In this document: positions 5,346 to 51,220 of the stretch, one piece after another
Layout of the letters: the number at the start of each line of letters is the position of its first letter
Numbering within the stretch: the first letter of the stretch is position 1
Virus record (IMG/VR): IMGVR_UViG_3300032770_000001
Location: 124,001-188,000 of that record
Length of the DNA: 64,000 bases
Direction: 5' to 3' (one strand)
Position numbers and translations under genes: made by a program
Notes under the pieces: generated by a model
Told to the model about the DNA's origin: nothing
The model's input: the letters and a program-made list of their open reading frames with translations, nothing else
The model's database searches: none

Positions 5346-5391
5346 AGATATGGTAGACTCCGTGGTATTAGTTAATCATGAGGTCTGCCAC

Positions 5392-6180
5392 ATGAAGCTG
5401 AAGTACACGAAGGAAATGTTAGAGCCGTTGGTGCGAGAGAGCACCAGTTTTCGGCAGGTCATTGACAAGCTGGGTATACGTCAGGGCGGCGGCACTCAGG
5501 CTAACCTTGTTCGTCGCATTAAGGCGCATGGATTAGACACGTCTCATTTCCTCGGACAGGCGCACGGTCGCGGTAAGCTTCGCGTTCGTTTAATTGCTTC
5601 GGAGGTTCTCGTCAATAATCGGACAGGTCGCAGAGAACACACCGATGTGCTTAGACGGGTGATGTTGGAATCGGGCGTCCCGTACCACTGTGAGCTATGT
5701 CCTAATGATGGAACTTGGCAGGGCCGACCGATAGTTTTGGAGATCGATCACCGGAACGGAAACAATCTGGATAATCGATTGGAGAATCTTCGATTCCTCT
5801 GTCCGAACTGCCATAGCCAACAGGTGACGGATGGTTCGAAAAATATTGCACTTCGTGAATTTGAGAAAAAACAAGGCTGGGTTTTGAAGGATAGTACGAC
5901 GCCAACGGAGTTCATGGCTAAGCACTACGAGGAATTGGCTAATAAAGTGCGCGAGCGATATCCGGATATGGCGTCAATGTTGGAGAGAATTGCGGATAAA
6001 GTCCGCTCCTACCTCAGCATGAACAAGGCAACGGTTCGCGTGTTCATTCGTGCTGACGGACAAGGCGCTACTTTTTATGTGCAGGGCGATGAGGAATGTG
6101 ATGCGATTGCAAAAGTCCGCGATCTGGCTCGCGACCTCACGAAAGAAGCGCAGGAGGGTACAAGATTTCGTTTAGTTTGA
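5392..6180 (+). CDS. HNH endonuclease with a C-terminal extension
   Basis: CELC...LEIDHRNGNNLDNRLENLRFLCPNCH; N-terminus of the kind seen in tRNA-linked phage HNH genes. Confidence 0.9.
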   Translation: MKLKYTKEMLEPLVRESTSFRQVIDKLGIRQGGGTQANLVRRIKAHGLDTSHFLGQAHGRGKLRVRLIASEVLVNNRTGRREHTDVLRRVMLESGVPYHCELCPNDGTWQGRPIVLEIDHRNGNNLDNRLENLRFLCPNCHSQQVTDGSKNIALREFEKKQGWVLKDSTTPTEFMAKHYEELANKVRERYPDMASMLERIADKVRSYLSMNKATVRVFIRADGQGATFYVQGDEECDAIAKVRDLARDLTKEAQEGTRFRLV

Positions 6181-8560: not shown

Positions 8561-8589
8561 TTGACAGTGAATCGACTTTCTGGTATTGT
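8561..8589 (+). promoter_or_regulatory. Sigma70-type promoter of the Pro tRNA operon
   Basis: TTGACA 8561-8566, 17-nt spacer ending TGG, TATTGT 8584-8589. Confidence 0.8.
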
Positions 8590-8870: not shown

Positions 8871-8945
8871 CAGGGCGTGGTGTAGTGGTTGCATCCCGCA
8901 TTTGGAATGCGGTGGTCGCTGGTTCGACCCCAGCCGCCCTGACCA
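8871..8945 (+). tRNA. tRNA-Pro(TGG), divergent
   Basis: CAGGGCG/CGCCCTG acceptor stem, CCGCA-TTTGGAA-TGCGG, ACCA. Confidence 0.9.
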
Positions 8946-8950
8946 ATCAT

Positions 8951-9027
8951 CAGGGTAGAGTTGGGTCTGGTTCAATCCCCGCCTCGGACGCGGGTGTTCG
9001 CGGGTTCAAATCCCGCTGCCCTGACCA
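8951..9027 (+). tRNA. tRNA-Pro(CGG), divergent
   Basis: CAGGGTA/TGCCCTG acceptor stem, CCCGC-CTCGGAC-GCGGG, ACCA. Confidence 0.85.
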
Positions 9028-9043
9028 AATTTCTGAGGTCAGT

Positions 9044-9202
9044 ATGTTTGAGGCGAGTGAGTGGCGGCATAAAGGTTGTGGTGGTCAGCCCTGTGAGTTT
9101 GAGCCGGGGCGGTGGGCTTGCACGGGGTGCAAGCGTGCATGGTACGCTGGAGCGAACTTTTTCACGTACCTCGCAAACGTGGTCTTTGAAAAGAGAGTCT
9201 GA
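9044..9202 (+). CDS. Small Cys-containing protein (52 aa)
   Basis: MFEASEWRHKGCGGQPC...CTGC; short, support is weak. Confidence 0.4.
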   Translation: MFEASEWRHKGCGGQPCEFEPGRWACTGCKRAWYAGANFFTYLANVVFEKRV

Positions 9203-9350
9203 GGTGGAGCGACAGAGGTGGGCAAGTGGCATCGCTGCCTGTGTCGTTGTACGAAGCGTGGGGGCTTGCTCCTGCGTTAGTCCACAGTACAGCCTGCCCA
9301 ACCGATGCCGGATGGCTGCCGAGTCGCCCATAAATTTCGTTTCGAGGAAT

Positions 9351-9427
9351 CAGGATGTAGCTTAGCTTGGTAAAGCGCGTGCTTGGGGTGCACGAGACCG
9401 GGAGTTCAAATCTCCCCATCCTGACCA
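9351..9427 (+). tRNA. tRNA-Pro(GGG)
   Basis: CAGGATG/CATCCTG acceptor stem, CGTGC-TTGGGGT-GCACG, ACCA. Confidence 0.95.
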
Positions 9428-9459
9428 AAAATTTGAGAAGTAACAAGACCGAGGAAGGT

Positions 9460-9516
9460 ACATGGATGCTGGGGCGGTGTGCGCACACGTGAGTTCAATG
9501 CTCACTCCATGTACCA
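9460..9516 (+). ncRNA. 57-nt mini-tRNA (acceptor stem, T-arm and CCA; no D-arm or anticodon loop)
   Basis: ACATGGA/TCCATGT plus ACCA; GTGAG-TTCAATG-CTCAC T-arm. Confidence 0.55.
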
Positions 9517-9586
9517 TCGGATATTCCGACACGCTAAGATTGTACGGTGCGTGACATCGAGTGGAAGTCTCGAAACAGGTTTTTGA

Positions 9587-9658
9587 TGCGGGGTAGTGTA
9601 GTAGCGCACGGAAGTCTCATAAACTTCCAGACCAGTGCGACTCTGGCGACCGCAACCA
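9587..9658 (+). tRNA. Degenerate tRNA(CAT), Met or Ile2
   Basis: GAAGT-CTCATAA-ACTTC anticodon arm, short D-arm, T-loop TGCGACT, mismatch in the acceptor stem, ACCA. Confidence 0.7.
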
Positions 9659-9661
9659 TTT

Positions 9662-9737
9662 CGGTGTGTAGCTCAATGGCTAGAGCACTCGGTTTGGGGC
9701 CGAGGGGTTGGGGGTTCGAGTCCCTCCACGCCGACCA
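9662..9737 (+). tRNA. tRNA-Pro(TGG), canonical
   Basis: CGGTGTG/CACGCCG acceptor stem, CTCGG-TTTGGGG-CCGAG, ACCA. Confidence 0.95.
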
Positions 9738-9752
9738 TTTTGGAGAACGAAC

Positions 9753-10413
9753 ATGATTGTTGAAATTCGAGCAGCGGAAGGTGGAGATGACGCAAAGCTT
9801 CTCGTGTCCGACCAACTCACGATCTATGCGAGATTGGCGGCTCGGAGGGGTCTTTGAGTTTGAGATAACCGAAGAACGTCCCGGCATAGCGGTGTTTCAG
9901 GTGACGGGACAGGGAGCCCCGGCGTTGTTTGCAAATGAGAGCGGGGGGCACCGTTGGCAGCGAGTTCCGCCGACCGAACGATACGGACGACGGCAGACAT
10001 CGACAATCACTGTCGCAGTTTTCGAGGAGCCGAAGGTCGAAGAGATCAACATTCGTGCTCAGGATTTAGAGTGGGATACGTTCCGGAGCCGTGGTAAGGG
10101 CGGACAGAACGTTAACAAGGTCGAGACGGCTGTTCGCGTGACGCACAAGCCGAGTGGCTTGGTCGTGCGTTGTGAGAATGGCCGTAGTCAGTGGCATAAT
10201 AAGCGAACCGCTTTGCAGATTCTTGCGGCACGGTTGGAAGCGCGAGATCGAGAGCAGAGACAAAGCGTAGTGGTTGCAGATCGTCGGTCGCAGATCGGCA
10301 CAGGGCAGCGAGGCGACAAACGTCGTACAGCAAACGAGCGACAGGATCAAGTCACGGATCATGTCACCGGGCAGAAATGGCGCTATACTGATTACGTGAA
10401 GGGGAACTGGTAA
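9753..10413 (+). CDS. Class I release factor homolog (RF1-like PxT, GGQ, no N-terminal domain 1), expressed through a +1 frameshift at CTT-TGA 9852-9857
   Basis: ORF0 MIVEIRAAEGGDDAKLL...RRGL* (9753-9857); the +1 frame continues with RVPPTE, GGQNVNKVETAVR, RSQIG; GGAG RBS at 9742. Confidence 0.9.
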
Positions 10414-11024
10414 TGGAACAGTATCCGAGTATCGACGGTAGCAGCAAAGCACCCATAGGGGTTCCGTGCATCGCTTTTTATAAGTACGACGGCTCTAACC
10501 TTCGATGGGAGTGGAACCCCAAGAAGGGCTGGTTCAAGTTCGGTACGCGGACGCAGTTGTTCGGTAAGGATGATCCGTTGTGGGGCAAGGCGGTGCCGAT
10601 TTTCATGAACCAACTGGCGGATGAGATCGTGTACCGGGTCAAGCACGTGGAGCGGGGCTGTCAGCGGATCACGGCGTTCACGGAGTTTTTCGGATCGGGG
10701 ACATTCGCCGGACAGCACCCGGAGATGACTGGCGGCAGCGAGGAGAAGGAATTGAGGCTCTTCGATGTCTACCTGTTCAAGCGGGGCTTGATGAAACCTC
10801 GGCAGTTCGTGAAGAGTTTTGGCGATCTACCGCAGGCGGCTCAGGTGATCTATGATGGAAACCTGAACCGACAGTTCATCGAAGACGTTCGGATGGGGCT
10901 GTACCCAGTGAATGAGGGGGTGGTTGCGAAGGGTGACGATTTCATGGTGAAGATCAAGACCTACGCATACCTGAAGCGGCTGAACGAAGTTTACGGAACT
11001 GCATATCGGAACTATTGGGAGTAA
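10413..11024 (+). CDS. ATP-dependent RNA ligase-like nucleotidyltransferase
   Basis: KYDGSN, EFFG, FDV, EGVV, KIKT motifs; TAATG overlap with the release factor gene. Confidence 0.75.
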   Translation: MEQYPSIDGSSKAPIGVPCIAFYKYDGSNLRWEWNPKKGWFKFGTRTQLFGKDDPLWGKAVPIFMNQLADEIVYRVKHVERGCQRITAFTEFFGSGTFAGQHPEMTGGSEEKELRLFDVYLFKRGLMKPRQFVKSFGDLPQAAQVIYDGNLNRQFIEDVRMGLYPVNEGVVAKGDDFMVKIKTYAYLKRLNEVYGTAYRNYWE

Positions 11025-11100
11025 TTTTGAAGGCGATTTTTCAGTTTGTTCGCAGGATTTTTCGCCGGGGCGAGTATCGTCCTATAGGGTGTTGGTGAGG

Positions 11101-11177
11101 CGGGGATTAGCTCAGCTTGGTAGAGCGCACGCTTCGGGAGCGTGAGGTCGCAGGTTCGAATCCTGCATCCCCGACCA
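11101..11177 (+). tRNA. tRNA-Pro(CGG), canonical
   Basis: CGGGGAT/ATCCCCG acceptor stem, CACGC-TTCGGGA-GCGTG, ACCA. Confidence 0.97.
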
Positions 11178-11216
11178 ATATCAAACCCTTTAGATAGACC
11201 GATATTTGGAGTCCCC

Positions 11217-11642
11217 TTGGCAAACGACGATAGTTTTTTTGAAGGTGGAGAGCGGCAGGAGAACCTGAACCGCCATAACGCCCGGAAGGGTGGGTATGAC
11301 CCGTTTAGGGTCACCGCAGGTCAAGAAAGACGCGGTGAGCGTATTACGTGGGTCGATGTCTGGCTGGCTAATCCAGACGGAGCCGCCAATCACGATGAGG
11401 CTGAGGCACTCTCGGTAGGCGACGTAATGAAACACGTAGCGTCAGAGAACGATTTGTATGTAGGTTTTGAGAAAGAACTGGCTGAGGTTCAGCGAGAGTC
11501 TTTCGATGAGTCAGGTGTCAAGCTGGCGAACATGGGGTCGAGAGAGTTCTTCAAAGACTCCCCACCCCCGGCACCAGTACCCGCCCCACGTGTGGCGGCA
11601 CCAGTGAAGAAGTCGGATGACGATTTCTTCCCAAAATTTTAA
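11217..11642 (+). CDS. Acidic hypothetical protein
   Basis: TTG start after GGAG; Pro-rich tail ending DDDFFPKF. Confidence 0.5.
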   Translation: MANDDSFFEGGERQENLNRHNARKGGYDPFRVTAGQERRGERITWVDVWLANPDGAANHDEAEALSVGDVMKHVASENDLYVGFEKELAEVQRESFDESGVKLANMGSREFFKDSPPPAPVPAPRVAAPVKKSDDDFFPKF

Positions 11643-11643
11643 C

Positions 11644-11721
11644 GCCTGTGTAGCTCAGACTGGCTAGAGCGCCCGTCTCATAAGCGGGAGGTCGGGGGTT
11701 CGATGCCCTCCACAGGCACCA
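11644..11721 (+). tRNA. tRNA(CAT), elongator Met or Ile2
   Basis: GCCTGTG/CACAGGC acceptor stem, CCCGT-CTCATAA-GCGGG, ACCA. Confidence 0.92.
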
Positions 11722-11909
11722 GTTTTAGGGAGACCGGGAACCTGCGGGCCCTTCCGAGGCTATAGCACCAGCGGCAACGGTGATTAACTGCCCAAACACA
11801 GTATCGGATACCCGGCAATTCTATTCAACAGGAGGATGAAGCAGATGGCTAACCCTAGCATCACCGTACATACCGTGTAAGGTGTGGACGGTGGGAGGTA
11901 AAAAGCCAA

Positions 11910-12227
11910 ATGCGTCACCCTCGCACCCGCGACGAACGTCGCGCTGTACGCGAGCAGATCATTGCTCGTCGCAAATTTATCGCAACCCAGATTTGGGACA
12001 TTCCGTCCTACGTCCGCCCTCCGCATGAAGGCGAATGGAACCGTTGGTCGAAGCCAGAGGAATGGGAGCCATTTCAGTGGGGTCGCTACCACAAGTGGAA
12101 CATGAACTGTGGCGATACCATGTGTCATGGTGCGAAGTATTTCAAATGCGCTTCCAAGCGTCGTAAAGCACGCAAGGAAGCCGAGTCAACCGCCGAGTTT
12201 CGTCGTCGAAATAAGGCCATCGATTGA
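11910..12227 (+). CDS. Basic hypothetical protein
   Basis: 105 aa, Arg/Lys/Trp-rich; GGAGG upstream. Confidence 0.65.
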   Translation: MRHPRTRDERRAVREQIIARRKFIATQIWDIPSYVRPPHEGEWNRWSKPEEWEPFQWGRYHKWNMNCGDTMCHGAKYFKCASKRRKARKEAESTAEFRRRNKAID

Positions 12228-12252
12228 CAATGAAAAGACTTTGGACTAGCGT
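12224..12252 (+). promoter_or_regulatory. Possible sigma70 promoter of the ncRNA array
   Basis: TTGACA 12224-12229, 17 nt, TAGCGT. Confidence 0.45.
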
Positions 12253-12309
12253 ATTATTTATTGCGGGGTCTGGTTAAACCCTAGTGGCGATGACCACTCC
12301 CCGGTTTTA

Positions 12310-12505
12310 CCCCGGCACCCGATACGCAACGGGGCGCTAGTGATTAGGAAGGGTCGAGGCGAACTGCGTGCCCCCAAGGTGGGGCTAGCCGAAAGCCCGG
12401 ATAACGTCCGACGTGGTGCCCGGTTCTAGTCAACCGTCGTGCGTCTACCTTTCGGGGAATTACAAGTACCCGAAAGGACGTGATGATGCAGTGCACTTGC
12501 CGGGG
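12310..12505 (+). ncRNA. Structured RNA A (about 195 nt, class unknown)
   Basis: Closing stem CCCCGGCA/TGCCGGGG; CCTTTCGGG/CCCGAAAGG; GCCCC/GGGGC. Confidence 0.55.
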
Positions 12506-12526
12506 TTCTTTGATCTTTGATAGTTT

Positions 12527-12762
12527 TAGAGTCGAGTGGCCCGTGATTCAACTGGTTCAGTGGTTTCAGTAAGAGGGTCGAATGGCCTGTCAGGGACAAA
12601 TAGATACTCCCTGAGCGATGTTAGACCGCTATCCCCAGTATAAAAAACGCAGCAGCGGGGGCAGTATCCGTAAGGACTGCGGGAGGCTCCACGAAAAGGT
12701 GCTAGACAACCTGTGGGAGGCCGTATCGGGGTTCTAGCTAAACCGACCTGTGCTCGACTCTA
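12527..12762 (+). ncRNA. Structured RNA B (about 236 nt, class unknown)
   Basis: 11-bp closing stem TAGAGTCGAGT/GCTCGACTCTA; flanked by T-runs. Confidence 0.65.
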
Positions 12763-12770
12763 ATTTTTAT

Positions 12771-12862
12771 GGCGGATGCCCGGATAGCGTAAGCAGTCAC
12801 GTGAAAGTCGTGTTAACAGCCGGGGCGGGGATGTTGGCGTAAGCCAAGCGAACCATCCGCCA
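12771..12862 (+). ncRNA. Structured RNA C (92 nt, GNRA loops, ends in CCA)
   Basis: GGCGGATG/CATCCGCC closing stem; GTAA, GAAA and GTAA tetraloops. Confidence 0.6.
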
Positions 12863-12867
12863 AGGTT

Positions 12868-12939
12868 TTGCCGCTGTGGTATGAAACGCTACCAAATGGG
12901 CACGGTTCCGAAAGGACGCAATGGCCCTGCCAGCGGCAA
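12868..12939 (+). ncRNA. Structured RNA D (72 nt)
   Basis: TTGCCGCTG/CAGCGGCAA closing stem; TCC-GAAA-GGA hairpin. Confidence 0.55.
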
Positions 12940-12948
12940 CGTTTTTGA

Positions 12949-13025
12949 TGCGGGGTGGAGCAGTCAGGTAGCTTGTCGGGCTCATAACCCGAAGGTCGGC
13001 GGTTCAAATCCGTCCCCCGCTTCCA
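12949..13025 (+). tRNA. Initiator tRNA-fMet(CAT)
   Basis: Three G-C pairs in TCGGG-CTCATAA-CCCGA; unpaired 1:72 (U:U); CCA. Confidence 0.9.
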
Positions 13026-13029
13026 AGTG

Positions 13030-13318
13030 TTCGCCGCCGTGGGTTGTTAGTTGTACTCAGAGTGCCGTCAGGAACAGCAAGATCGTACTAGTACCTGAGA
13101 GCGCAACCCACGGTTTAGAGGCGATTGCCGTCACCTGCGGATGTAGTACGGTCTGGGCGTCAGGTGCGCCGGGTCGGTGACCCAGACCGGAGCGACATCG
13201 TTGACCGGACATTCCGGTTTCGTTAGCAGGTCCTCATGGGACATCAGCATGGTGCCTGAGTAGTGCTGAAGTTCGAGGAACCGCGAAAGCGTGAAACCTG
13301 TGAAGCGATCCTCAGGCC
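13030..13318 (+). ncRNA. Structured RNA E with an H-type pseudoknot
   Basis: CCGTGGGTTG/CAACCCACGG; crossing helices CACCTG/CAGGTG and CGGTCTGGG/CCCAGACCG. Confidence 0.6.
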
Positions 13319-13331
13319 GATCTTTGAAAAG
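13319..13331 (+). promoter_or_regulatory. rRNA-type boxA-like element
   Basis: GATCTTTGAAAAG between two structured RNAs. Confidence 0.55.
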
Positions 13332-13332
13332 T

Positions 13333-13482
13333 TTGCGGCGGCGTTCCCGGTGTCCCGTCAATAGACTGGTTCCTGACCGGATACGTGAGTAATCGTTCTT
13401 CAAGGGGTGAAATAAAAGAACGGCGCAGAACAGGTTCCTGCGCGTGGGGCTGTGATTTTCCAGCTACTACCTCTCGCCGCAA
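13333..13482 (+). ncRNA. Structured RNA F (150 nt)
   Basis: TTGCGGCG/CGCCGCAA closing stem; GCGCAG/CTGCGC and CGTTCTT/AAGAACG hairpins. Confidence 0.55.
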
Positions 13483-13489
13483 TATAACA

Positions 13490-14025
13490 AATCTGCAAGT
13501 TGCATTCCGATGCCCGAAGCGCCCGATGAGGGTTTGCGGACGGTAGCGTGACTTGCGGAGGGTAGGTGAACGGCTTCACAGCCGCCGTCGAAAGACGGGC
13601 AAGTCCGCCGTAAATTCGGGACGACGTTCACCCGGTCAGGCACTACTAAAACAGAACCGTGGGGTGCCGTCAGTCGAGAGACTGGATGTTTCTGATTGCG
13701 CATGGCATGGCGAGGTCTCCCTATGTTTGGACGGAGGCAGGCCCTTTTCGACAAGGGACATACGTCAGAGCGGAATCACGGTGGGTATGTGGTTGGAACC
13801 ATCCATGTAGTGGCCTGACGCCTAATTTCAGTTTCCGGTCGTGGCGGAAAAGAGACGATAAACAAATAGAGACGCTAAAACTCGCTGAGAGGATGTACCC
13901 TGATTTCGACAGGGATTCTCAGCCTGTGAGACTCTGTAGGTAGCACCCACGTCTGACAGATGTTAGTGGCTCGAAAGAGCAGCAGAGTCATGCACCGTGG
14001 AGAATCGGGAATCGGTGCCGACTGG
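13490..14025 (+). ncRNA. Large ornate RNA (about 540 nt; GOLLD/ROOL-like candidate)
   Basis: Many nested helices including a long-range 13635-13646/13807-13819 pairing, GNRA loops, no credible CDS. Confidence 0.65.
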
Positions 14026-14103
14026 AAGATTTTTGGAGACAACATGAATAGCACTCACACCCCGACCGGATGACCCTTGCTCATCCTTCGGAGGTAAGGT
14101 AAT

Positions 14104-14361
14104 ATGGCATGTGACACCTGTATCTTTCTGAACAACGTTCGGACCCGCCCGGTAGGGAAGGGAAAGGACGAGCAGAAAGGCGAGAAGCTGGAGCCCTGCT
14201 CCATGAAATATGCCTGCAATCCGTTTTGGGACGGAGCGCAGGGAGTGGGCAAGGTCGTGACTGAGTCGTACTGTGCGACCTGCTCGGAAGTAGCTGACAA
14301 ATGTGGATGCACGCAAGGATTGCGTGTGATCCGGCAGCGCAAGCTGCATTATGCTCGGTAA
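14104..14361 (+). CDS. Cys-rich small protein
   Basis: 85 aa with CxxC repeats; GGAGG upstream. Confidence 0.55.
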   Translation: MACDTCIFLNNVRTRPVGKGKDEQKGEKLEPCSMKYACNPFWDGAQGVGKVVTESYCATCSEVADKCGCTQGLRVIRQRKLHYAR

Positions 14362-14363
14362 CC

Positions 14364-14450
14364 ATGAAGATTGACGACGGAACATTGATGGCGATTGGAC
14401 TGCTGGTGTTTGCAGCGTTTTACATTCTGTCTCCATTGATCGTCGGGTAA
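14364..14450 (+). CDS. 28-aa single-TM peptide
   Basis: MKIDDGTLMAIGLLVFAAFYILSPLIVG. Confidence 0.45.
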   Translation: MKIDDGTLMAIGLLVFAAFYILSPLIVG

Positions 14451-14451
14451 G

Positions 14452-14645
14452 TTCGTGCGGCTGACTCGCCTTGAGCAGGGCTATCTTAGGTGCCCTGAGC
14501 GCACACAAGCTTCAGCAGCGACGGAGTTATGACCCGTAGGGGGTTATGAGCCCTTTGGCTGCTGAGAGGGAAGTGAGTACCAGTGGCAACCGCGAAAGCG
14601 CCGATGCCCACGCCCTCCGTCCAGTTGCCTACACGTGCGCAACCT
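14452..14645 (+). ncRNA. Pseudoknotted structured RNA G
   Basis: GCGCAC/GTGCGC closing stem; CAGCAGC/GCTGCTG; loop-loop GACGGAG/CTCCGTC; GGCAAC/GTTGCC. Confidence 0.6.
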
Positions 14646-14707
14646 TTGCTTTTGGACGTGAATATTAAAATGCGAAGGAACGTCATCATAACGTGGTATT
14701 AGGTAAT

Positions 14708-15034
14708 ATGGCTGCTGAAATTCTCGAAGACGTTTACTTGCACATTGGCAACGGTGGGGTCCAGTTTCAGGTCCACCGGGACAATAAAGGGCGTTGCCTC
14801 CTGAAGGTTGGAGCATCGCATTTCGGTCAGAAGACCAACACGATGGAGTTGCTTGTGACTCCCGATAGCCTGCGGCAGATCGGCGAAGCTTTTGTTCGCG
14901 CATCGCAGCAAGAGTTCCCCGGCAAGCCGTATGTTTACAGCGCCGAGGTTCCGGTGTACACTGGTTCTGGTAACGCCGAAAGCAGCACGGGCGGCGATGA
15001 ACCAAAGCAGGAACCGCAGCAATTGACAGTTTAA
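14708..15034 (+). CDS. Hypothetical protein
   Basis: ATG 6 nt after GGTATTA; 108 aa. Confidence 0.7.
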   Translation: MAAEILEDVYLHIGNGGVQFQVHRDNKGRCLLKVGASHFGQKTNTMELLVTPDSLRQIGEAFVRASQQEFPGKPYVYSAEVPVYTGSGNAESSTGGDEPKQEPQQLTV

Positions 15035-15090
15035 CGTTCCCGAACGCAAACCGGGTGGTGGATCGTATCACTGAGACGTGATGCCCCTGC

Positions 15091-15120
15091 GGGGCAACCA
15101 AAAGTTGCCCCCGTTGTTTT
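15091..15120 (+). terminator. Intrinsic terminator
   Basis: GGGGCAAC-CAAAA-GTTGCCCC followed by CGTTGTTTT. Confidence 0.65.
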
Positions 15121-15132
15121 ATCAAAGATTTT

Positions 15133-15315
15133 ATGGCAGAAACGACCGAACGTTATATCGTGACTCACCACCAGCCATCTGAGTGGTACAACGTTTGGGA
15201 TAAACTGTGGACGACTGATGTCGTAAAAGTCAGCAGTCTCACAGGACGCGGCAAAGAGATTGCCGACAAGATTTGCGCAGACTTGAACGCTCACCCGTTC
15301 CCGCCTGCGGAATGA
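15133..15315 (+). CDS. Small hypothetical protein
   Basis: 60-aa ORF. Confidence 0.55.
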   Translation: MAETTERYIVTHHQPSEWYNVWDKLWTTDVVKVSSLTGRGKEIADKICADLNAHPFPPAE

Positions 15316-15411
15316 GTTTTCGAACTATTAGGATCATTACTGAATGAAGCTCTACGACTACACTCTCGACTTGTTTACCAGCCCCTTCCGGGGCTTGTAA
15401 TACGTGTGTCT

Positions 15412-15488
15412 GGGGCGGTAGCTCAGTCCGGTAGAGCGAGGGCCTGAAAAGCCCTGCGTCGTAGGTTCAAATCCTACCCGTCCCACCA
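15412..15488 (+). tRNA. tRNA-Phe(GAA)
   Basis: GGGGCGG/CCGTCCC acceptor stem, AGGGC-CTGAAAA-GCCCT, ACCA. Confidence 0.95.
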
Positions 15489-15514
15489 AATTTCTCAATC
15501 ACACAATTCAAATT

Positions 15515-16000
15515 TCAAGGGGACGTAGCTGATGTGGTCTTAGCGCGGGCCTGAAAAACCTGAGATGGAGGTTCGATTCCTCTCGTCCCCACCAATTTTC
15601 TTCGCGCCGTAACTTTCCGATGACAATTCGCGCAACGTACCTCGCACTTGGCGATCTCCCGTTTGATGGAGTCTAAACTGTATCCGCTTCTGACCATGAA
15701 ACAAATCTCCAGCCGTTTCTTACCACGAACATGGTCAAAATCAAGGCATACCGGATCAGTCTCCGGGCAGTCCACGCAGCCATGAGTCGCGAGATATGAT
15801 TGGACATACCGTTTGTTCCGTAACCTATCCGCACGCTTTCGAGCCCTGACCTTAGTTGCTCGCGTTTTCGAGTTCGCGTAGTATCCGGTATTGTAGTTGG
15901 ACATACAGGTCTTGCAGTGTGAACGGCGAGTGCCGAGGGTTTTATTCCGGAAATGGAACTCGCCCTCGGCTTTATTCGCATTGCATTTCGTACAAATCAT
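15515..16000 (-). CDS. HNH endonuclease whose 3' end overlaps tRNA-Phe in antisense
   Basis: CVDC...LDFDHVRG...CEVRCANCH; ATG 16000 overlaps the upstream TGA. Confidence 0.85.
   Translation of the reverse strand: MICTKCNANKAEGEFHFRNKTLGTRRSHCKTCMSNYNTGYYANSKTRATKVRARKRADRLRNKRYVQSYLATHGCVDCPETDPVCLDFDHVRGKKRLEICFMVRSGYSLDSIKREIAKCEVRCANCHRKVTARRKLVGTRGIEPPSQVFQARAKTTSATSP
15519..15594 (+). tRNA. tRNA-Phe(GAA), divergent
   Basis: GGGGACG/CGTCCCC acceptor stem, loop CTGAAAA, TTCGATT T-loop, ACCA. Confidence 0.9.
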
Positions 16001-49200: not shown

Positions 49201-49737
49201 TTACTGAAATCGAGCCCGAATTCCCGCTAGAAGACGCTCCCGTTTAACGGGATCAGTCCACTGGTTTCTGGCGGCGGTCGCAATGCTTTTATTGTGTTTT
49301 GCGGTATGTTTCTTACCCTTACGGGTTTGACCCATTTTCAACCTAGTTTCTATCGAGAGTTCTTTCCCCTTCCAATGTGATCTCCCGGTCGGCACACCCG
49401 CATGAGCTAATCTCATTTTTGCGCGGCTTTCGTCGGTATGTTGTCCACCAAACCCCGCCCCACCTGCGGTACGGTTGTAGCCCGAAGGGATCATTGAGTT
49501 GTACTCAGTGATATAGCGTGCTTCTAGGGCATTAAGCTCTTTGCGGGAGGTTGCTCTATCGATCTCAACTATTGTGAAAACCTTCGAACCGTATTTTCGA
49601 ATTGCACAGTGGATCGGAAAGCGGCTTTTGCCACGAGCAGCCTTTAGATGAAGACCCCACCGTCTCTCTAATGACTGACATGTCTGTCCGACATAAAGTT
49701 TTTTGTTTATGGTGTTGCGGATGAGGTAAACGATCAT
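49201..49737 (-). CDS. GIY-YIG homing endonuclease with a NUMOD3-like tail
   Basis: IVYLI...LYVGQT...R...H...E...GYN; HTDESRAKMR. Confidence 0.92.
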   Translation of the reverse strand: MIVYLIRNTINKKLYVGQTCQSLERRWGLHLKAARGKSRFPIHCAIRKYGSKVFTIVEIDRATSRKELNALEARYITEYNSMIPSGYNRTAGGAGFGGQHTDESRAKMRLAHAGVPTGRSHWKGKELSIETRLKMGQTRKGKKHTAKHNKSIATAARNQWTDPVKRERLLAGIRARFQ

Positions 49738-49919
49738 GGTTTTTTCTTCCGATGCCATTTTTGGGGACGGTTCCAATACGGGTTTTTGCAATTTCCACAA
49801 GCAGTTGGGATAGGGGTTGTCCAAACCCCATTTTCTAGGACCGGACGAGGAATCCATCGGTGTCCGCATCGCTCGCAAGTGCATTCGGTCGCCTGCAACG
49901 AAATTTGTCGTTGTCCCAC
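49734..49919 (-). CDS. Small Zn-ribbon protein
   Basis: CERCGHRW...CGNCKNPYW; ATGA overlap with the GIY-YIG gene. Confidence 0.7.
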   Translation of the reverse strand: MGQRQISLQATECTCERCGHRWIPRPVLENGVWTTPIPTACGNCKNPYWNRPQKWHRKKKP

Positions 49920-49975: not shown

Positions 49976-51220
49976 ATGATCTTGGAATATGGTGATACTT
50001 CCAAACTCAAGGGCCTTTCATGGTATATGCTTGAACTCAGAAGCGACAAAACCGTTGAGCCCACCATGAAGCGACTCGGCGGCGAGTTGAAGGGAATTTT
50101 CCGCAACGACCCCATCGAAGTCTTCGTTCCAGTCCAGAACCGCGACCTCGACACTTTCGATATGTCCACGCTCCAGTACGTGTTCGTCCGGAGCAATAAT
50201 TTCCAGTCCCTTCTCCGGCTCAGACAGGTGACCGGGGCGTGCGGATTGGTGACCAAAGGTGAGTCCAACCGTCCCTCCGATGCCATCCCCGTGGACGATG
50301 AATACGTGCAGGGGCTCGTCCACGACGCCGAGGAGGAGCACCGCAAGCGTGCGGTCGGCATCGAGGTCGGCAGCTTCGTTCGTATCCTCCAAGGGCAGAC
50401 TCGTGACTTTTGCGGCACCGTGGAGATCGTCGGCGATGGCAAGGCGGTCGTCAAGATCACCCTGTTGACCAAGTACATCATGCTGGAGACCCCGATCCGC
50501 AATCTTTTGAAGCTCCCGGACGTACCCGCCAACAAGCGGGTCTACTATTTCGGTCCGCTGGTGAACGACCTGAGCCCGGAGGAACTCTCCCTGATCGAAC
50601 AAGACCTCCATCTTGACGATTCCATGCCCGTAGAGGTCATGGAAGAGCAGCAGGCTGAGGAGCCTAAACGTCATTCGCGGCAGCGCACGGTCACGGCATT
50701 GGTCAAGAAGCTGGTTCTGCTGGAAGGGCTGCATAATCCGTTGGAAATTGCCCGTGTGGTGCTCGAAGCCCTCAAGAACGATGAGATTAAGGCTCCCAAG
50801 AACCTGTTCATCATCTACGGGATCATCAAAGACCGCCTGATGAAGGACTATTTTTTGGTGAAAGACCCGGAAGTCAAGACCTATCGTGACGTGATCCACA
50901 AATACGGCAAGGCTTACAAGTTTTCTGCGAATCAGATTGCTAAGTTAGACGCGGCAATCAACATCCCGATCAACACGTCGGAGCCAGCCGATGAGGTCGT
51001 GGTGGTCGAGAAGAAGCAACGCGGTCCGAAAAAACGCCGCAAGCTTCCTCACGACAAGTGCAACACCTGCTACCACACCCGCGAGCAGCATAAGCCGACT
51101 CCGAAGGGTAGCTGGGGACGTTGTTCCGGCATCAGCGATCACACGATTCACTCGTGGGTCAAGCCGGGAACCTCAAACCCGTGCACGTGTGTCCGATTTA
51201 AGGAAAGAGCAGTCAAGTAG
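49976..51220 (+). CDS. nusG: NusG-family (NGN plus KOW) transcription factor with a C-terminal extension
   Basis: WYML...EVFVP...YVFV NGN domain; VGSFVRILQG...GTV KOW domain; about 240 extra residues. Confidence 0.8.
   Translation: MILEYGDTSKLKGLSWYMLELRSDKTVEPTMKRLGGELKGIFRNDPIEVFVPVQNRDLDTFDMSTLQYVFVRSNNFQSLLRLRQVTGACGLVTKGESNRPSDAIPVDDEYVQGLVHDAEEEHRKRAVGIEVGSFVRILQGQTRDFCGTVEIVGDGKAVVKITLLTKYIMLETPIRNLLKLPDVPANKRVYYFGPLVNDLSPEELSLIEQDLHLDDSMPVEVMEEQQAEEPKRHSRQRTVTALVKKLVLLEGLHNPLEIARVVLEALKNDEIKAPKNLFIIYGIIKDRLMKDYFLVKDPEVKTYRDVIHKYGKAYKFSANQIAKLDAAINIPINTSEPADEVVVVEKKQRGPKKRRKLPHDKCNTCYHTREQHKPTPKGSWGRCSGISDHTIHSWVKPGTSNPCTCVRFKERAVK

What the first reader, a model, noticed from the sequence alone, without database searches (positions are those of the whole stretch)
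9182..13331. rRNA-type boxA-like sites in the RNA operons, plus a phage NusG paralog
GGTCTTTGAAAA (9181), GTTCTTTGATCTTTGA (12505-12520) and GATCTTTGAAAAG (13319) sit between or just before RNA units. Established: boxA (consensus close to GxTCTTTGAAAA in many bacteria) recruits NusB/NusE for Rho-resistant transcription of untranslated rRNA operons. Inference: the phage uses the rrn antitermination system for its untranslated RNA arrays, possibly with its own NusG (49976).
Basis: partly seen in the sequence, partly recalled or inferred. Interest (0 to 1): 0.6.

Follow-up and report, generated by a model that had tools for sequence, protein, structure and literature searches.

The report
rRNA-type boxA sites in phage tRNA arrays
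A 456-kb wetland phage carries, on the transcribed strand of its long tRNA and non-coding RNA arrays, short sequences identical to the boxA signal that bacterial rRNA operons use to make RNA polymerase termination-resistant, and a cultured relative has the same thing, so these phages probably borrow the host's rRNA antitermination machinery.

Summary
Sites 1 (9181) and 3 (13319) carry G[GA]TCTTTGAAAA. That is the core found 66-307 nt upstream of the 16S 5' probe site in 65 of 79 rrn leaders I fetched, mostly Acidobacteriota.

A 14-column matrix built from those leaders puts its two best hits in the whole 455,708-bp phage genome on the sense strand of tRNA arrays. One is site 3. The other lies outside the window, 5 nt before a tRNA-Trp. 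Site 1 ranks tenth. Site 2 is weak and varies between strains.

In the only cultured relative, Tunturiibacter phage Tunturi_5, two of the three best hits lie at the 5' ends of its two largest tRNA arrays. They carry the GACAAC variant seen in rrn leaders of its host's family. Other relatives have such sites (G008, G009, G011) or lack them (G001, G002).

ORF 49976-51220 is a real but divergent NusG-fold protein (NGN plus KOW) with a C-terminal half that matches no solved fold.

Nus-factor binding, antitermination and any link to the phage NusG are inferred, not shown. Verdict: real boxA-like elements, a new setting for a known mechanism, testable in Tunturi_5.

The parts
8561..8589 (+). Sigma-70-type promoter-like site (TTGACA, 17 nt, TATTGT, with TG and an A/T-rich upstream tract), about 280 nt before the first tRNA-Pro of the array
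   Evidence: 10 of 12 matches, the best in the region; sequence. The same promoter type stands before the tRNA-Trp array in the genome and in relatives.
8871..15594 (+). RNA array: tRNA-Pro x5, tRNA-Met x2, tRNA-Phe x2, one tRNA-like element (9588-9654), structured non-coding modules and a few small ORFs. The longest stretch without a supported ORF is 12228-14103.
   Evidence: RNA genes; ORFs.
9181..9192 (+). boxA-like site 1, GGTCTTTGAAAA, between tRNA-Pro(CGG) and tRNA-Pro(GGG)
   Evidence: Matrix score 13.9, tenth in the genome. A strain variant has GATCTTTGAAAA, also an allowed boxA form.
9044..9202 (+). Possible 52-codon Cys-rich small ORF whose last codons overlap site 1; status uncertain
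   Evidence: translation. Three of three strain differences inside it are synonymous third-position changes. Against it: no homologue, no tblastn match in relatives, no frame preference.
12505..12520 (+). boxA-like site 2, two overlapping partial copies (GTTCTTTGA, TCTTTGA); weak
   Evidence: Matrix score 8.1. A 1-nt deletion and a 10-nt duplication occur in strain contigs. Not present before the orthologous RNA in L006.
12530..12757 (+). Conserved structured RNA module directly downstream of site 2; family unknown
   Evidence: A 26-nt stretch is 100% identical and a 131-nt stretch 80% identical to L006/L007 10339-10519, with a 46-nt insert in the window. No Rfam match.
13319..13331 (+). boxA-like site 3, GATCTTTGAAAAG, in the longest untranslated stretch of the array
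   Evidence: Matrix score 17.3, second in the whole genome and within the range of real rrn leaders. Unchanged in the strain contig that covers it.
13131..13403 (-). Possible 90-codon ORF antisense to site 3; status uncertain
   Evidence: Consistent frame periodicity over three windows. Against it: no homologue among 5.8 billion proteins, and a strain deletion of about 13330-13830 cuts it.
49976..51220 (+). Divergent NusG-fold protein of 414 aa: NGN plus KOW in residues 1-165, then a conserved helical domain and a Cys/His-rich tail without a fold match
   Evidence: The homologue in Tunturi_5 is annotated 'transcription antiterminator'.

Best explanation
Sites 1 and 3, and a third copy at genome position 283730 just before a tRNA-Trp, are functional boxA elements of the rRNA-operon type. 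Host RNA polymerase starts at strong sigma-70-type promoters and transcribes the arrays. When boxA emerges in the nascent RNA it is bound by the host NusB:S10 dimer. With NusA, NusG and SuhB this converts the polymerase into the termination-resistant, fast, RNA-chaperoning form that normally makes rRNA. That would protect kilobases of untranslated tRNA and non-coding RNA from Rho. Shown here: the sequence identity to real rrn-leader boxA, the restriction to the sense strand of RNA arrays, and recurrence in related phages including a cultured one. Inferred: every binding step and the effect on termination. Site 2 is probably a decayed or non-functional copy. The phage NusG-like protein is a real elongation-factor homologue, but its part in this, if any, is open.
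For: (1) Of 79 rrn leaders fetched with a 16S 5' probe, mostly Acidobacteriota, 65 carry TCTTT[GA]A upstream of 16S. The commonest forms are GTTCTTTGAAAACT, GGTCTTTGACAACT, GATCTTTGACAACA and GATCTTTGAAAACT. Sites 1 and 3 match these over 12 nt. The published B. subtilis rrn consensus AUGAUCUUUGAAA, shown to bind NusB, also fits. (2) A 14-column matrix from those leaders ranks 283729 (18.4) and 137318, which is window site 3 (17.3), first and second among all positions on both strands. Real leaders score 16.5 or more. (3) Enrichment against local composition is 5 observed versus 0.19 expected. The E. coli-type consensus used as a control gives 0 of 32 hits in the arrays. (4) In Tunturi_5 the only exact TCTTTGAMAA in 308,711 bp lies 18 nt before the first tRNA of an array. 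Two of the three best matrix hits sit at the 5' ends of its two largest arrays (one 29 nt before the first tRNA, one after the first tRNA and 26 nt before the second) and carry GACAAC as in Granulicella-type rrn leaders. (5) The order promoter, small leader ORF, intrinsic terminator, boxA, tRNA-Trp recurs in the window's genome, in G008 and in Tunturi_5. (6) Of 63 exact sites inspected in relatives, 6 are non-coding and on the sense strand in tRNA arrays, and none is antisense to the tRNAs of an array. About 1.3 would be expected if these arrays take the same share of strand space as in the window's genome. (7) The window sites lie in the long untranslated stretches of the array.
Against: No binding or termination data exist. 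The host of this phage is unknown; Acidobacteriota is inferred from one relative at 44.6% identity. The elements are not universal: G001 has the same array start without boxA, G002 has no exact site in an array, and several arrays of this genome have none. None of the window's sites is conserved at a syntenic place. Site 1 may be coding and site 3 overlaps a periodicity signal on the other strand. UUUGA[AU] is a common spacer motif next to tRNAs here, 24 copies against 12 expected, so part of the signal could be general linker composition. At the array starts boxA lies downstream of an intrinsic terminator, which it therefore cannot help to pass.
Confidence: 0.5

Rival explanations
1. The strings are ordinary A/U-rich single-stranded linkers between structured RNAs, for example leaders or trailers used by RNase P or RNase E. 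They resemble boxA only because boxA is also U-rich followed by GAAA.
For: All tRNAs here encode CCA, and CCA is usually followed by AGUUU, AAUUU or GUUUU. Spacers such as AGUUUUGAAGU recur. Of 24 UUUGA[AU] copies in the arrays, about half lie within 30 nt of a tRNA end. Site 2 varies between strains and is not conserved. Several arrays and several relatives lack the element.
Against: Six of the 24 UUUGA[AU] copies carry the preceding UC, against about 1.5 expected. Agreement with rrn leaders extends over 12-14 nt. Tunturi_5 carries the GACAAC form of its host's family at two array starts. Segment-wise shuffles never reach the observed count.
Confidence: 0.25
2. Sites 1 and 3 lie in small protein-coding genes (9044-9202 on +, 13131-13403 on -), and the similarity to boxA is a by-product of coding sequence.
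For: Three of three strain differences in 9044-9202 are synonymous. The ORF has a GAGG 6 nt before its ATG and a CX4C...CX2C pattern. The minus-strand ORF shows one consistent frame over three windows.
Against: Neither ORF has any homologue or tblastn match in relatives. The first shows no frame preference. The second has a second-position difference and is truncated in a strain. Coding does not explain the copy before tRNA-Trp or those in Tunturi_5, G008, G009 and G011.
Confidence: 0.1
3. The elements do bind Nus factors, but for another end. They could act as a decoy that drains NusB:S10 from host rRNA synthesis, or as a repressor of a downstream gene as at E. coli suhB.
For: BoxA-dependent repression of suhB is established in E. 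coli (PMC5725501). The arrays have strong promoters.
Against: There are only three to five sites per genome. They stand before tRNAs and non-coding RNAs, not before start codons.
Confidence: 0.07
4. The motif is the loading signal of the phage's own NusG-like protein, as ops is for RfaH, and works without NusB:S10.
For: The clade shares a divergent NusG-fold protein with an added domain. Specialised NusG paralogues need a recruitment signal (PMC7819879).
Against: The motif is identical to host rrn boxA. This is expected if host factors read it and unexplained otherwise. G001 and G002 encode the protein but lack the motif in their arrays.
Confidence: 0.08

Closest known systems
boxA of bacterial rRNA operon leaders and spacers (rrn antitermination complex: NusB, NusE/S10, NusA, NusG, SuhB, S4)
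   Same: Same core sequence, G[GAT]TCTTTGA[AC]AA, as in 65 of 79 rrn leaders read here and as in the B. subtilis consensus. It sits on the transcribed strand of a long untranslated RNA operon downstream of a strong sigma-70-type promoter with an A/T-rich upstream tract.
   Different: It is encoded by a phage and stands before or between tRNAs and unknown non-coding RNAs, not 16S or 23S. The 3' flank (G or T, then varied) differs from the CTAG or CATA that follows in the rrn leaders. At array starts it follows an intrinsic terminator. No factor binding has been shown.
nut sites of lambdoid phages (boxA plus boxB, N-dependent antitermination)
   Same: A phage uses a boxA RNA to assemble host Nus factors on RNA polymerase (PMC2724277; PMC7819879).
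   Different: No N-like protein or boxB hairpin was identified. The sequence is of the full rrn type rather than the weaker lambda form. The targets are RNA genes rather than delayed-early mRNAs.
boxA upstream of non-rRNA targets: suhB and CRISPR arrays
   Same: These are precedents for boxA protecting or regulating other transcripts, including long untranslated arrays (PMC5725501; Stringer et al. 2020 as cited in PMC13753749).
   Different: Those are chromosomal loci of Gammaproteobacteria with the TCTTTAA form. Here it is phage tRNA arrays with the TCTTTGA form.
Specialised NusG paralogues (RfaH, LoaP, UpxY, ActX, TaA)
   Same: The phage protein has the NGN plus KOW fold and weak matches to the nusG and UpxY models. 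It is carried by a mobile genome, as several paralogues are.
   Different: It is below every curated family threshold. It has a 250-residue C-terminal extension with no fold match. The KOW loop that is FGR in bacterial NusG reads T-K-x. Its recruitment signal and partners are unknown.

Membership tests
boxA (NusB:NusE-binding RNA element) | Sequence agrees with the rrn-leader consensus of the relevant bacteria | tested here: met
   Sites 1 and 3 and the site at genome 283730 match G[GAT]TCTTTGA[AC]AA from 65 rrn leaders. Matrix ranks are 10, 2 and 1 in the genome. Site 2 does not (score 8.1).
boxA (NusB:NusE-binding RNA element) | Lies on the transcribed strand of an untranslated RNA operon, downstream of its promoter | tested here: met
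   All strong sites are on the tRNA strand, and the three best have no antisense counterpart. Promoter-like sites lie upstream at window 8561 and L040:721. No transcript data were available.
boxA (NusB:NusE-binding RNA element) | Conserved in related genomes at equivalent places | tested here: inconclusive
   The copy before tRNA-Trp is present in G000, G008 and Tunturi_5 and absent in G001. The window's own sites have no syntenic counterpart in L006. Other relatives carry sites elsewhere in their arrays.
boxA (NusB:NusE-binding RNA element) | Binds the NusB:S10 heterodimer | not testable with these tools
   No RNA-protein binding prediction or assay was available.
boxA (NusB:NusE-binding RNA element) | Confers read-through of Rho-dependent terminators | not testable with these tools
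   Only DNA runs hold this phage. No RNA data or reporter was available.
NusG/Spt5 family | N-terminal NGN domain followed by a KOW domain | tested here: met
   AlphaFold model of residues 1-205: pLDDT 72 overall and 85-92 over most of the NGN part. The 16 best Foldseek matches are all NusG, E from 6e-6 to 4e-4. The top 14 of 15 matches in the PDB profile search are NusG or Spt5, but weak, E from 0.035 to 0.6.
NusG/Spt5 family | Passes the curated sequence models (Pfam PF02357, TIGR00922) | tested here: not met
   No Pfam hit. TIGR00922 scores 21.5 bits against a cut-off of 135.7, although 29 of 30 homologues give this weak hit.
NusG/Spt5 family | KOW loop that contacts S10 and Rho (FGR in bacterial NusG) | tested here: inconclusive
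   In the profile alignment FGRETPV of Thermotoga NusG faces k-s-i-l-l-e-t-P-v. T165 and K166 are invariant in the phage family. Model confidence there is only about 60.

The most novel reading that the evidence does not exclude
A clade of jumbo phages, likely of Acidobacteriota and allied soil bacteria, builds its tRNA arrays as imitations of rRNA operons: a strong promoter with an A/T-rich upstream tract, a leader, and a host-type boxA. This captures the host's rRNA antitermination and chaperone complex for kilobases of untranslated RNA. The clade's own NusG-fold protein, with its extra C-terminal domain, replaces host NusG in that complex to make it phage-specific.
Probability: 0.15. Interest if true: 0.8.

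Novelty: new variant of a known kind. Interest (0 to 1): 0.62.

Why it matters
BoxA-dependent antitermination is established for rRNA operons, lambdoid nut sites, suhB and CRISPR arrays. I found no report of it for phage tRNA arrays, and the paper describing Tunturi_5 does not mention it.

Jumbo phages carry tens of tRNAs in arrays of many kilobases, and how such untranslated stretches escape Rho has not been addressed. If these sites work, they show a simple way for a phage to obtain fast, termination-resistant and chaperoned RNA synthesis from host parts.

The boxA variant a phage carries could also serve as a clue to its host.

Tunturi_5 and its host are in culture, so the question is directly testable. 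The associated NusG-fold protein with an unknown C-terminal domain is a candidate new elongation factor.

Tried and rejected
- **Promoter reading.** TTGAAA or TTGACA inside the motif resembles a -35 box. No acceptable -10 follows at any site. At the array starts the -10 would fall inside the tRNA.
- **tRNA-Gln anticodon arm.** Some GGTCTTTGAAACC strings in relatives are exactly that. The window's sites have no pairing flanks.
- **Duplicated segments.** The flanks of the sites share nothing beyond the motif.
- **Known RNA families.** Rfam finds nothing around the sites.
- **NusB or canonical NusG in the phage.** Neither is present.
- **Host from bacterial genomes.** A scan for the NusG-like protein found nothing. 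The atlas search on the release-factor-like ORF gave no host.
- **RNA evidence.** Only DNA runs hold the phage.
- **Single-strandedness.** Folding gave mixed unpaired probabilities, 0.15-0.80.
- **Markov coding scores.** They discriminate poorly in this genome.
- **Terminator-plus-boxA string across IMG/VR.** It found only a near-identical contig and G008/G010 among the relevant hits.
- **C-terminal half of the NusG-like protein.** No fold match, and not NusB-like.
- **Spacer boxA.** An exact copy between 16S and 23S was seen in only 5 of 27 operons, so the matrix rests on leaders alone.
- **Complex prediction.** I did not use it, because I do not claim that the phage protein binds S10 or Rho.


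Full report
**What the window is.** It is bases 124001-188000 of a single 455,708-bp IMG/VR virus record, rated complete by CheckV, with 53.7% G+C. ARAGORN finds 61 tRNAs and a tmRNA in strand-consistent arrays sorted by amino acid. The window holds one + strand array: Tyr x2, Leu x5, Pro x5, Met x2, Phe x2. Between the tRNAs lie a few ORFs: a truncated release-factor-like gene, an RNA-ligase-like gene and small conserved ORFs. There are also long stretches without a supported ORF, the longest being 12228-14103. Only wetland DNA metagenomes hold the phage, so no RNA data exist.

**The observation.** The three strings are at the stated coordinates. The 7-mer TCTTTGA is uninformative. It occurs 19 times against 10.7 expected in the window.

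The longer element behaves differently:
- TCTTTGAAAA occurs four times in the genome. Three copies are on the sense strand of non-coding DNA within tRNA regions, which make up 1.8% of the strand space.
- The published B. subtilis rrn consensus, allowing two mismatches, gives 4 of 23 hits there. The E. coli consensus as a control gives 0 of 32.
- Against dinucleotide shuffles of the same non-coding segments, GATCTTTGAAA with at most one mismatch is found 5 times versus 0.19 expected.
- An unbiased k-mer screen ranks the 10-mer first, but not significantly after multiple testing. The argument therefore depends on the motif having been defined in advance.

**Is it really the rRNA boxA?** The only cultured relative found through the NusG-like protein is Tunturiibacter phage Tunturi_5, a 308,711-bp phage of an acidobacterium (PMC11924767). 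I therefore fetched rrn operons with a 16S 5' probe. The hits are mostly Acidobacteriota, with a few other phyla. Of 79 leaders, 65 carry TCTTT[GA]A upstream of 16S; the TCTTTGA copy nearest 16S lies 66-307 nt before the probe site. The recurrent forms are GTTCTTTGAAAACT, GGTCTTTGACAACT, GATCTTTGACAACA and GATCTTTGAAAACT.

Sites 1 and 3 are identical to these over 12 nt. A 14-column matrix from the leaders, scanned over both strands of the phage genome, gives these ranks:

| Rank | Genome position | Score | Place |
|---|---|---|---|
| 1 | 283729 | 18.4 | outside the window, ends 5 nt before a tRNA-Trp |
| 2 | 137318 | 17.3 | window site 3 |
| 10 | 133180 | 13.9 | window site 1 |

Real leaders score 16.5 or more. 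Site 2 scores 8.1.

**Related phages.** The RNA-ligase-like ORF brought in 39 related loci.
- The closest syntenic relative, L006/L007, conserves the structured RNA at 12530-12757 but not site 2 before it. It has no exact boxA in its arrays.
- G001 has the same array start (promoter, small leader ORF, terminator, tRNA-Trp) without boxA.
- G008 has that architecture with TTCTTTGACAAG 17 nt before tRNA-Trp.
- G009 and G011 have exact copies 65-67 nt before tRNA-Val and tRNA-Phe, and between tRNA-Ala genes.
- Of 63 exact sites inspected in relatives, six are non-coding and on the sense strand in arrays, and none is antisense to the tRNAs of an array. Most of the rest lie in long ORFs. About 1.3 in arrays would be expected if those arrays take the same share of strand space as in this genome.

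Tunturi_5 gives the cleanest replicate. Its only exact TCTTTGAMAA lies 18 nt before the first tRNA of the 251.8-255.9 kb array. The matrix puts two of its three best genome-wide hits at the 5' ends of its two largest arrays: one 29 nt before the first tRNA, the other after the first tRNA and 26 nt before the second. Both read ..TTTGACAACCGAAG, the GACAAC form of Granulicella-type rrn leaders.

**Context of each site.** A strong sigma-70-type promoter stands at 8561-8589. Site 1 lies about 590 nt downstream of it, after two tRNAs. It overlaps the end of a possible 52-codon Cys-rich ORF. Three of three strain differences in that ORF are synonymous. One of them changes GG to GA at the degenerate position of boxA. 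The ORF has no homologue and no frame signal.

Site 2 shows a 1-nt deletion and a 10-nt duplication in strain contigs.

Site 3 follows the closing stem of a structured module. It also sits at the left edge of a segment of about 500 nt that one strain lacks. A minus-strand ORF over it shows frame periodicity but has no homologue.

The copy at 283730 follows a promoter, a 31-codon leader ORF and a 13-bp terminator. It ends 5 nt before a tRNA that ARAGORN missed and Rfam confirms at 41 bits.

**The caveat that matters most.** tRNA flanks in this phage are U-rich followed by GA. CCA is typically followed by AGUUU, and spacers such as AGUUUUGAAGU recur. UUUGA[AU] is twofold enriched in the arrays. 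Part of the signal may therefore be general linker composition. Against that, the UC before UUUGA is over-represented (6 of 24), the match to rrn leaders runs to 12-14 nt, and the variant in Tunturi_5 follows its host's family.

**The NusG paralog.** ORF 49976-51220 has no Pfam or PHROG hit, and the genome has no PF02357 or NusB match. It belongs to a large family found on contigs of 300-460 kb, some labelled NusG by JGI. Twenty-nine of 30 members give a weak TIGR00922 hit. The profile finds NusG or Spt5 in 14 of its 15 weak PDB matches. The model of residues 1-205 matches NusG structures in its 16 best Foldseek hits.

The C-terminal 220 residues model well (pLDDT 81) but match nothing. The KOW loop that is FGR in bacterial NusG is T-K-x. 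I found nothing that ties this protein to the boxA sites, and relatives that lack the sites still encode it.

**Conclusion.** The most likely reading, at about 0.5, is that these are working boxA elements. They would recruit host NusB:S10 and the rest of the rRNA antitermination complex to polymerase transcribing the phage's untranslated RNA arrays. The sequence, strand, placement and recurrence are shown. Binding and antitermination are inferred from established knowledge of rrn and lambda systems (PMC5725501, PMC13753749, PMC7819879). This is a new setting for a known mechanism, not universal within the clade, and testable in Tunturi_5.

Noticed in passing
L040:721-1023 (genome 283520-283822); also L168:1220-1547, L223:820-1100, L167:674-1010: A conserved array start: strong promoter, small leader ORF, strong intrinsic terminator, then tRNA-Trp. 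All four leader ORFs contain Trp codons (2, 1, 1 and 2). In the window's genome a leader segment can pair with the 5' arm of the terminator. This may be a Trp-sensing attenuator for the tRNA array.
   Followed up: partly
window 9757-10413 (+); genome 25852-26052 (-): A truncated release-factor-like ORF (end of the PCRF domain plus the RF-1 domain, 218 aa) sits inside the tRNA array. The genome also has two tRNAs with anticodon CUA, which reads the amber stop codon. Together they hint at stop-codon reassignment or suppression in part of the genome.
   Followed up: no
window 12530-12757 (+): A structured RNA of about 230 nt closed by a long-range stem. It is 80-100% identical to L006/L007 10339-10519 except for a 46-nt insert. 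It has no Rfam family.
   Followed up: partly
window 13330-13830: One strain contig joins 13329 to about 13831, removing roughly 500 nt between two AGTTT[GC]CGG repeats. This is a dispensable or mobile non-coding module whose left edge is boxA-like site 3.
   Followed up: partly
genome-wide tRNA flanks: Every tRNA encodes its CCA end. Most are followed at once by AGUUU, AAUUU or GUUUU, which fits the RNase E preference as I recall it (a purine, any base, the cut, then A or U, then UU). This is likely the processing signal of the arrays.
   Followed up: partly
window 9588-9654 (+); L040:948-1023 (+): tRNA-like genes that ARAGORN missed. One is a Met-like CAU element scoring 26 bits, below the Rfam threshold. 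The other is a tRNA-Trp scoring 41 bits.
   Followed up: yes
window 50558-51220 (+), residues 195-414 of the NusG-like protein: A confidently modelled helical domain plus a Cys/His-rich tail, with no match among solved structures and many invariant residues across the family.
   Followed up: partly
window 49201-49884 (-) and 5350-6180 (+): Homing-endonuclease-like ORFs. One next to the NusG-like gene has a GIY-YIG-like N-terminus by eye only. An HNH ORF (Pfam hit just below the gathering cut-off) lies inside the tRNA array.
   Followed up: no
window 10413-11024 (+): An RNA-ligase-like ORF (PHROG 548) inside the tRNA array. It is conserved at 44-72% identity in 39 loci of large viral contigs with 29-63% G+C, which makes it a useful marker of the clade.
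   Followed up: partly
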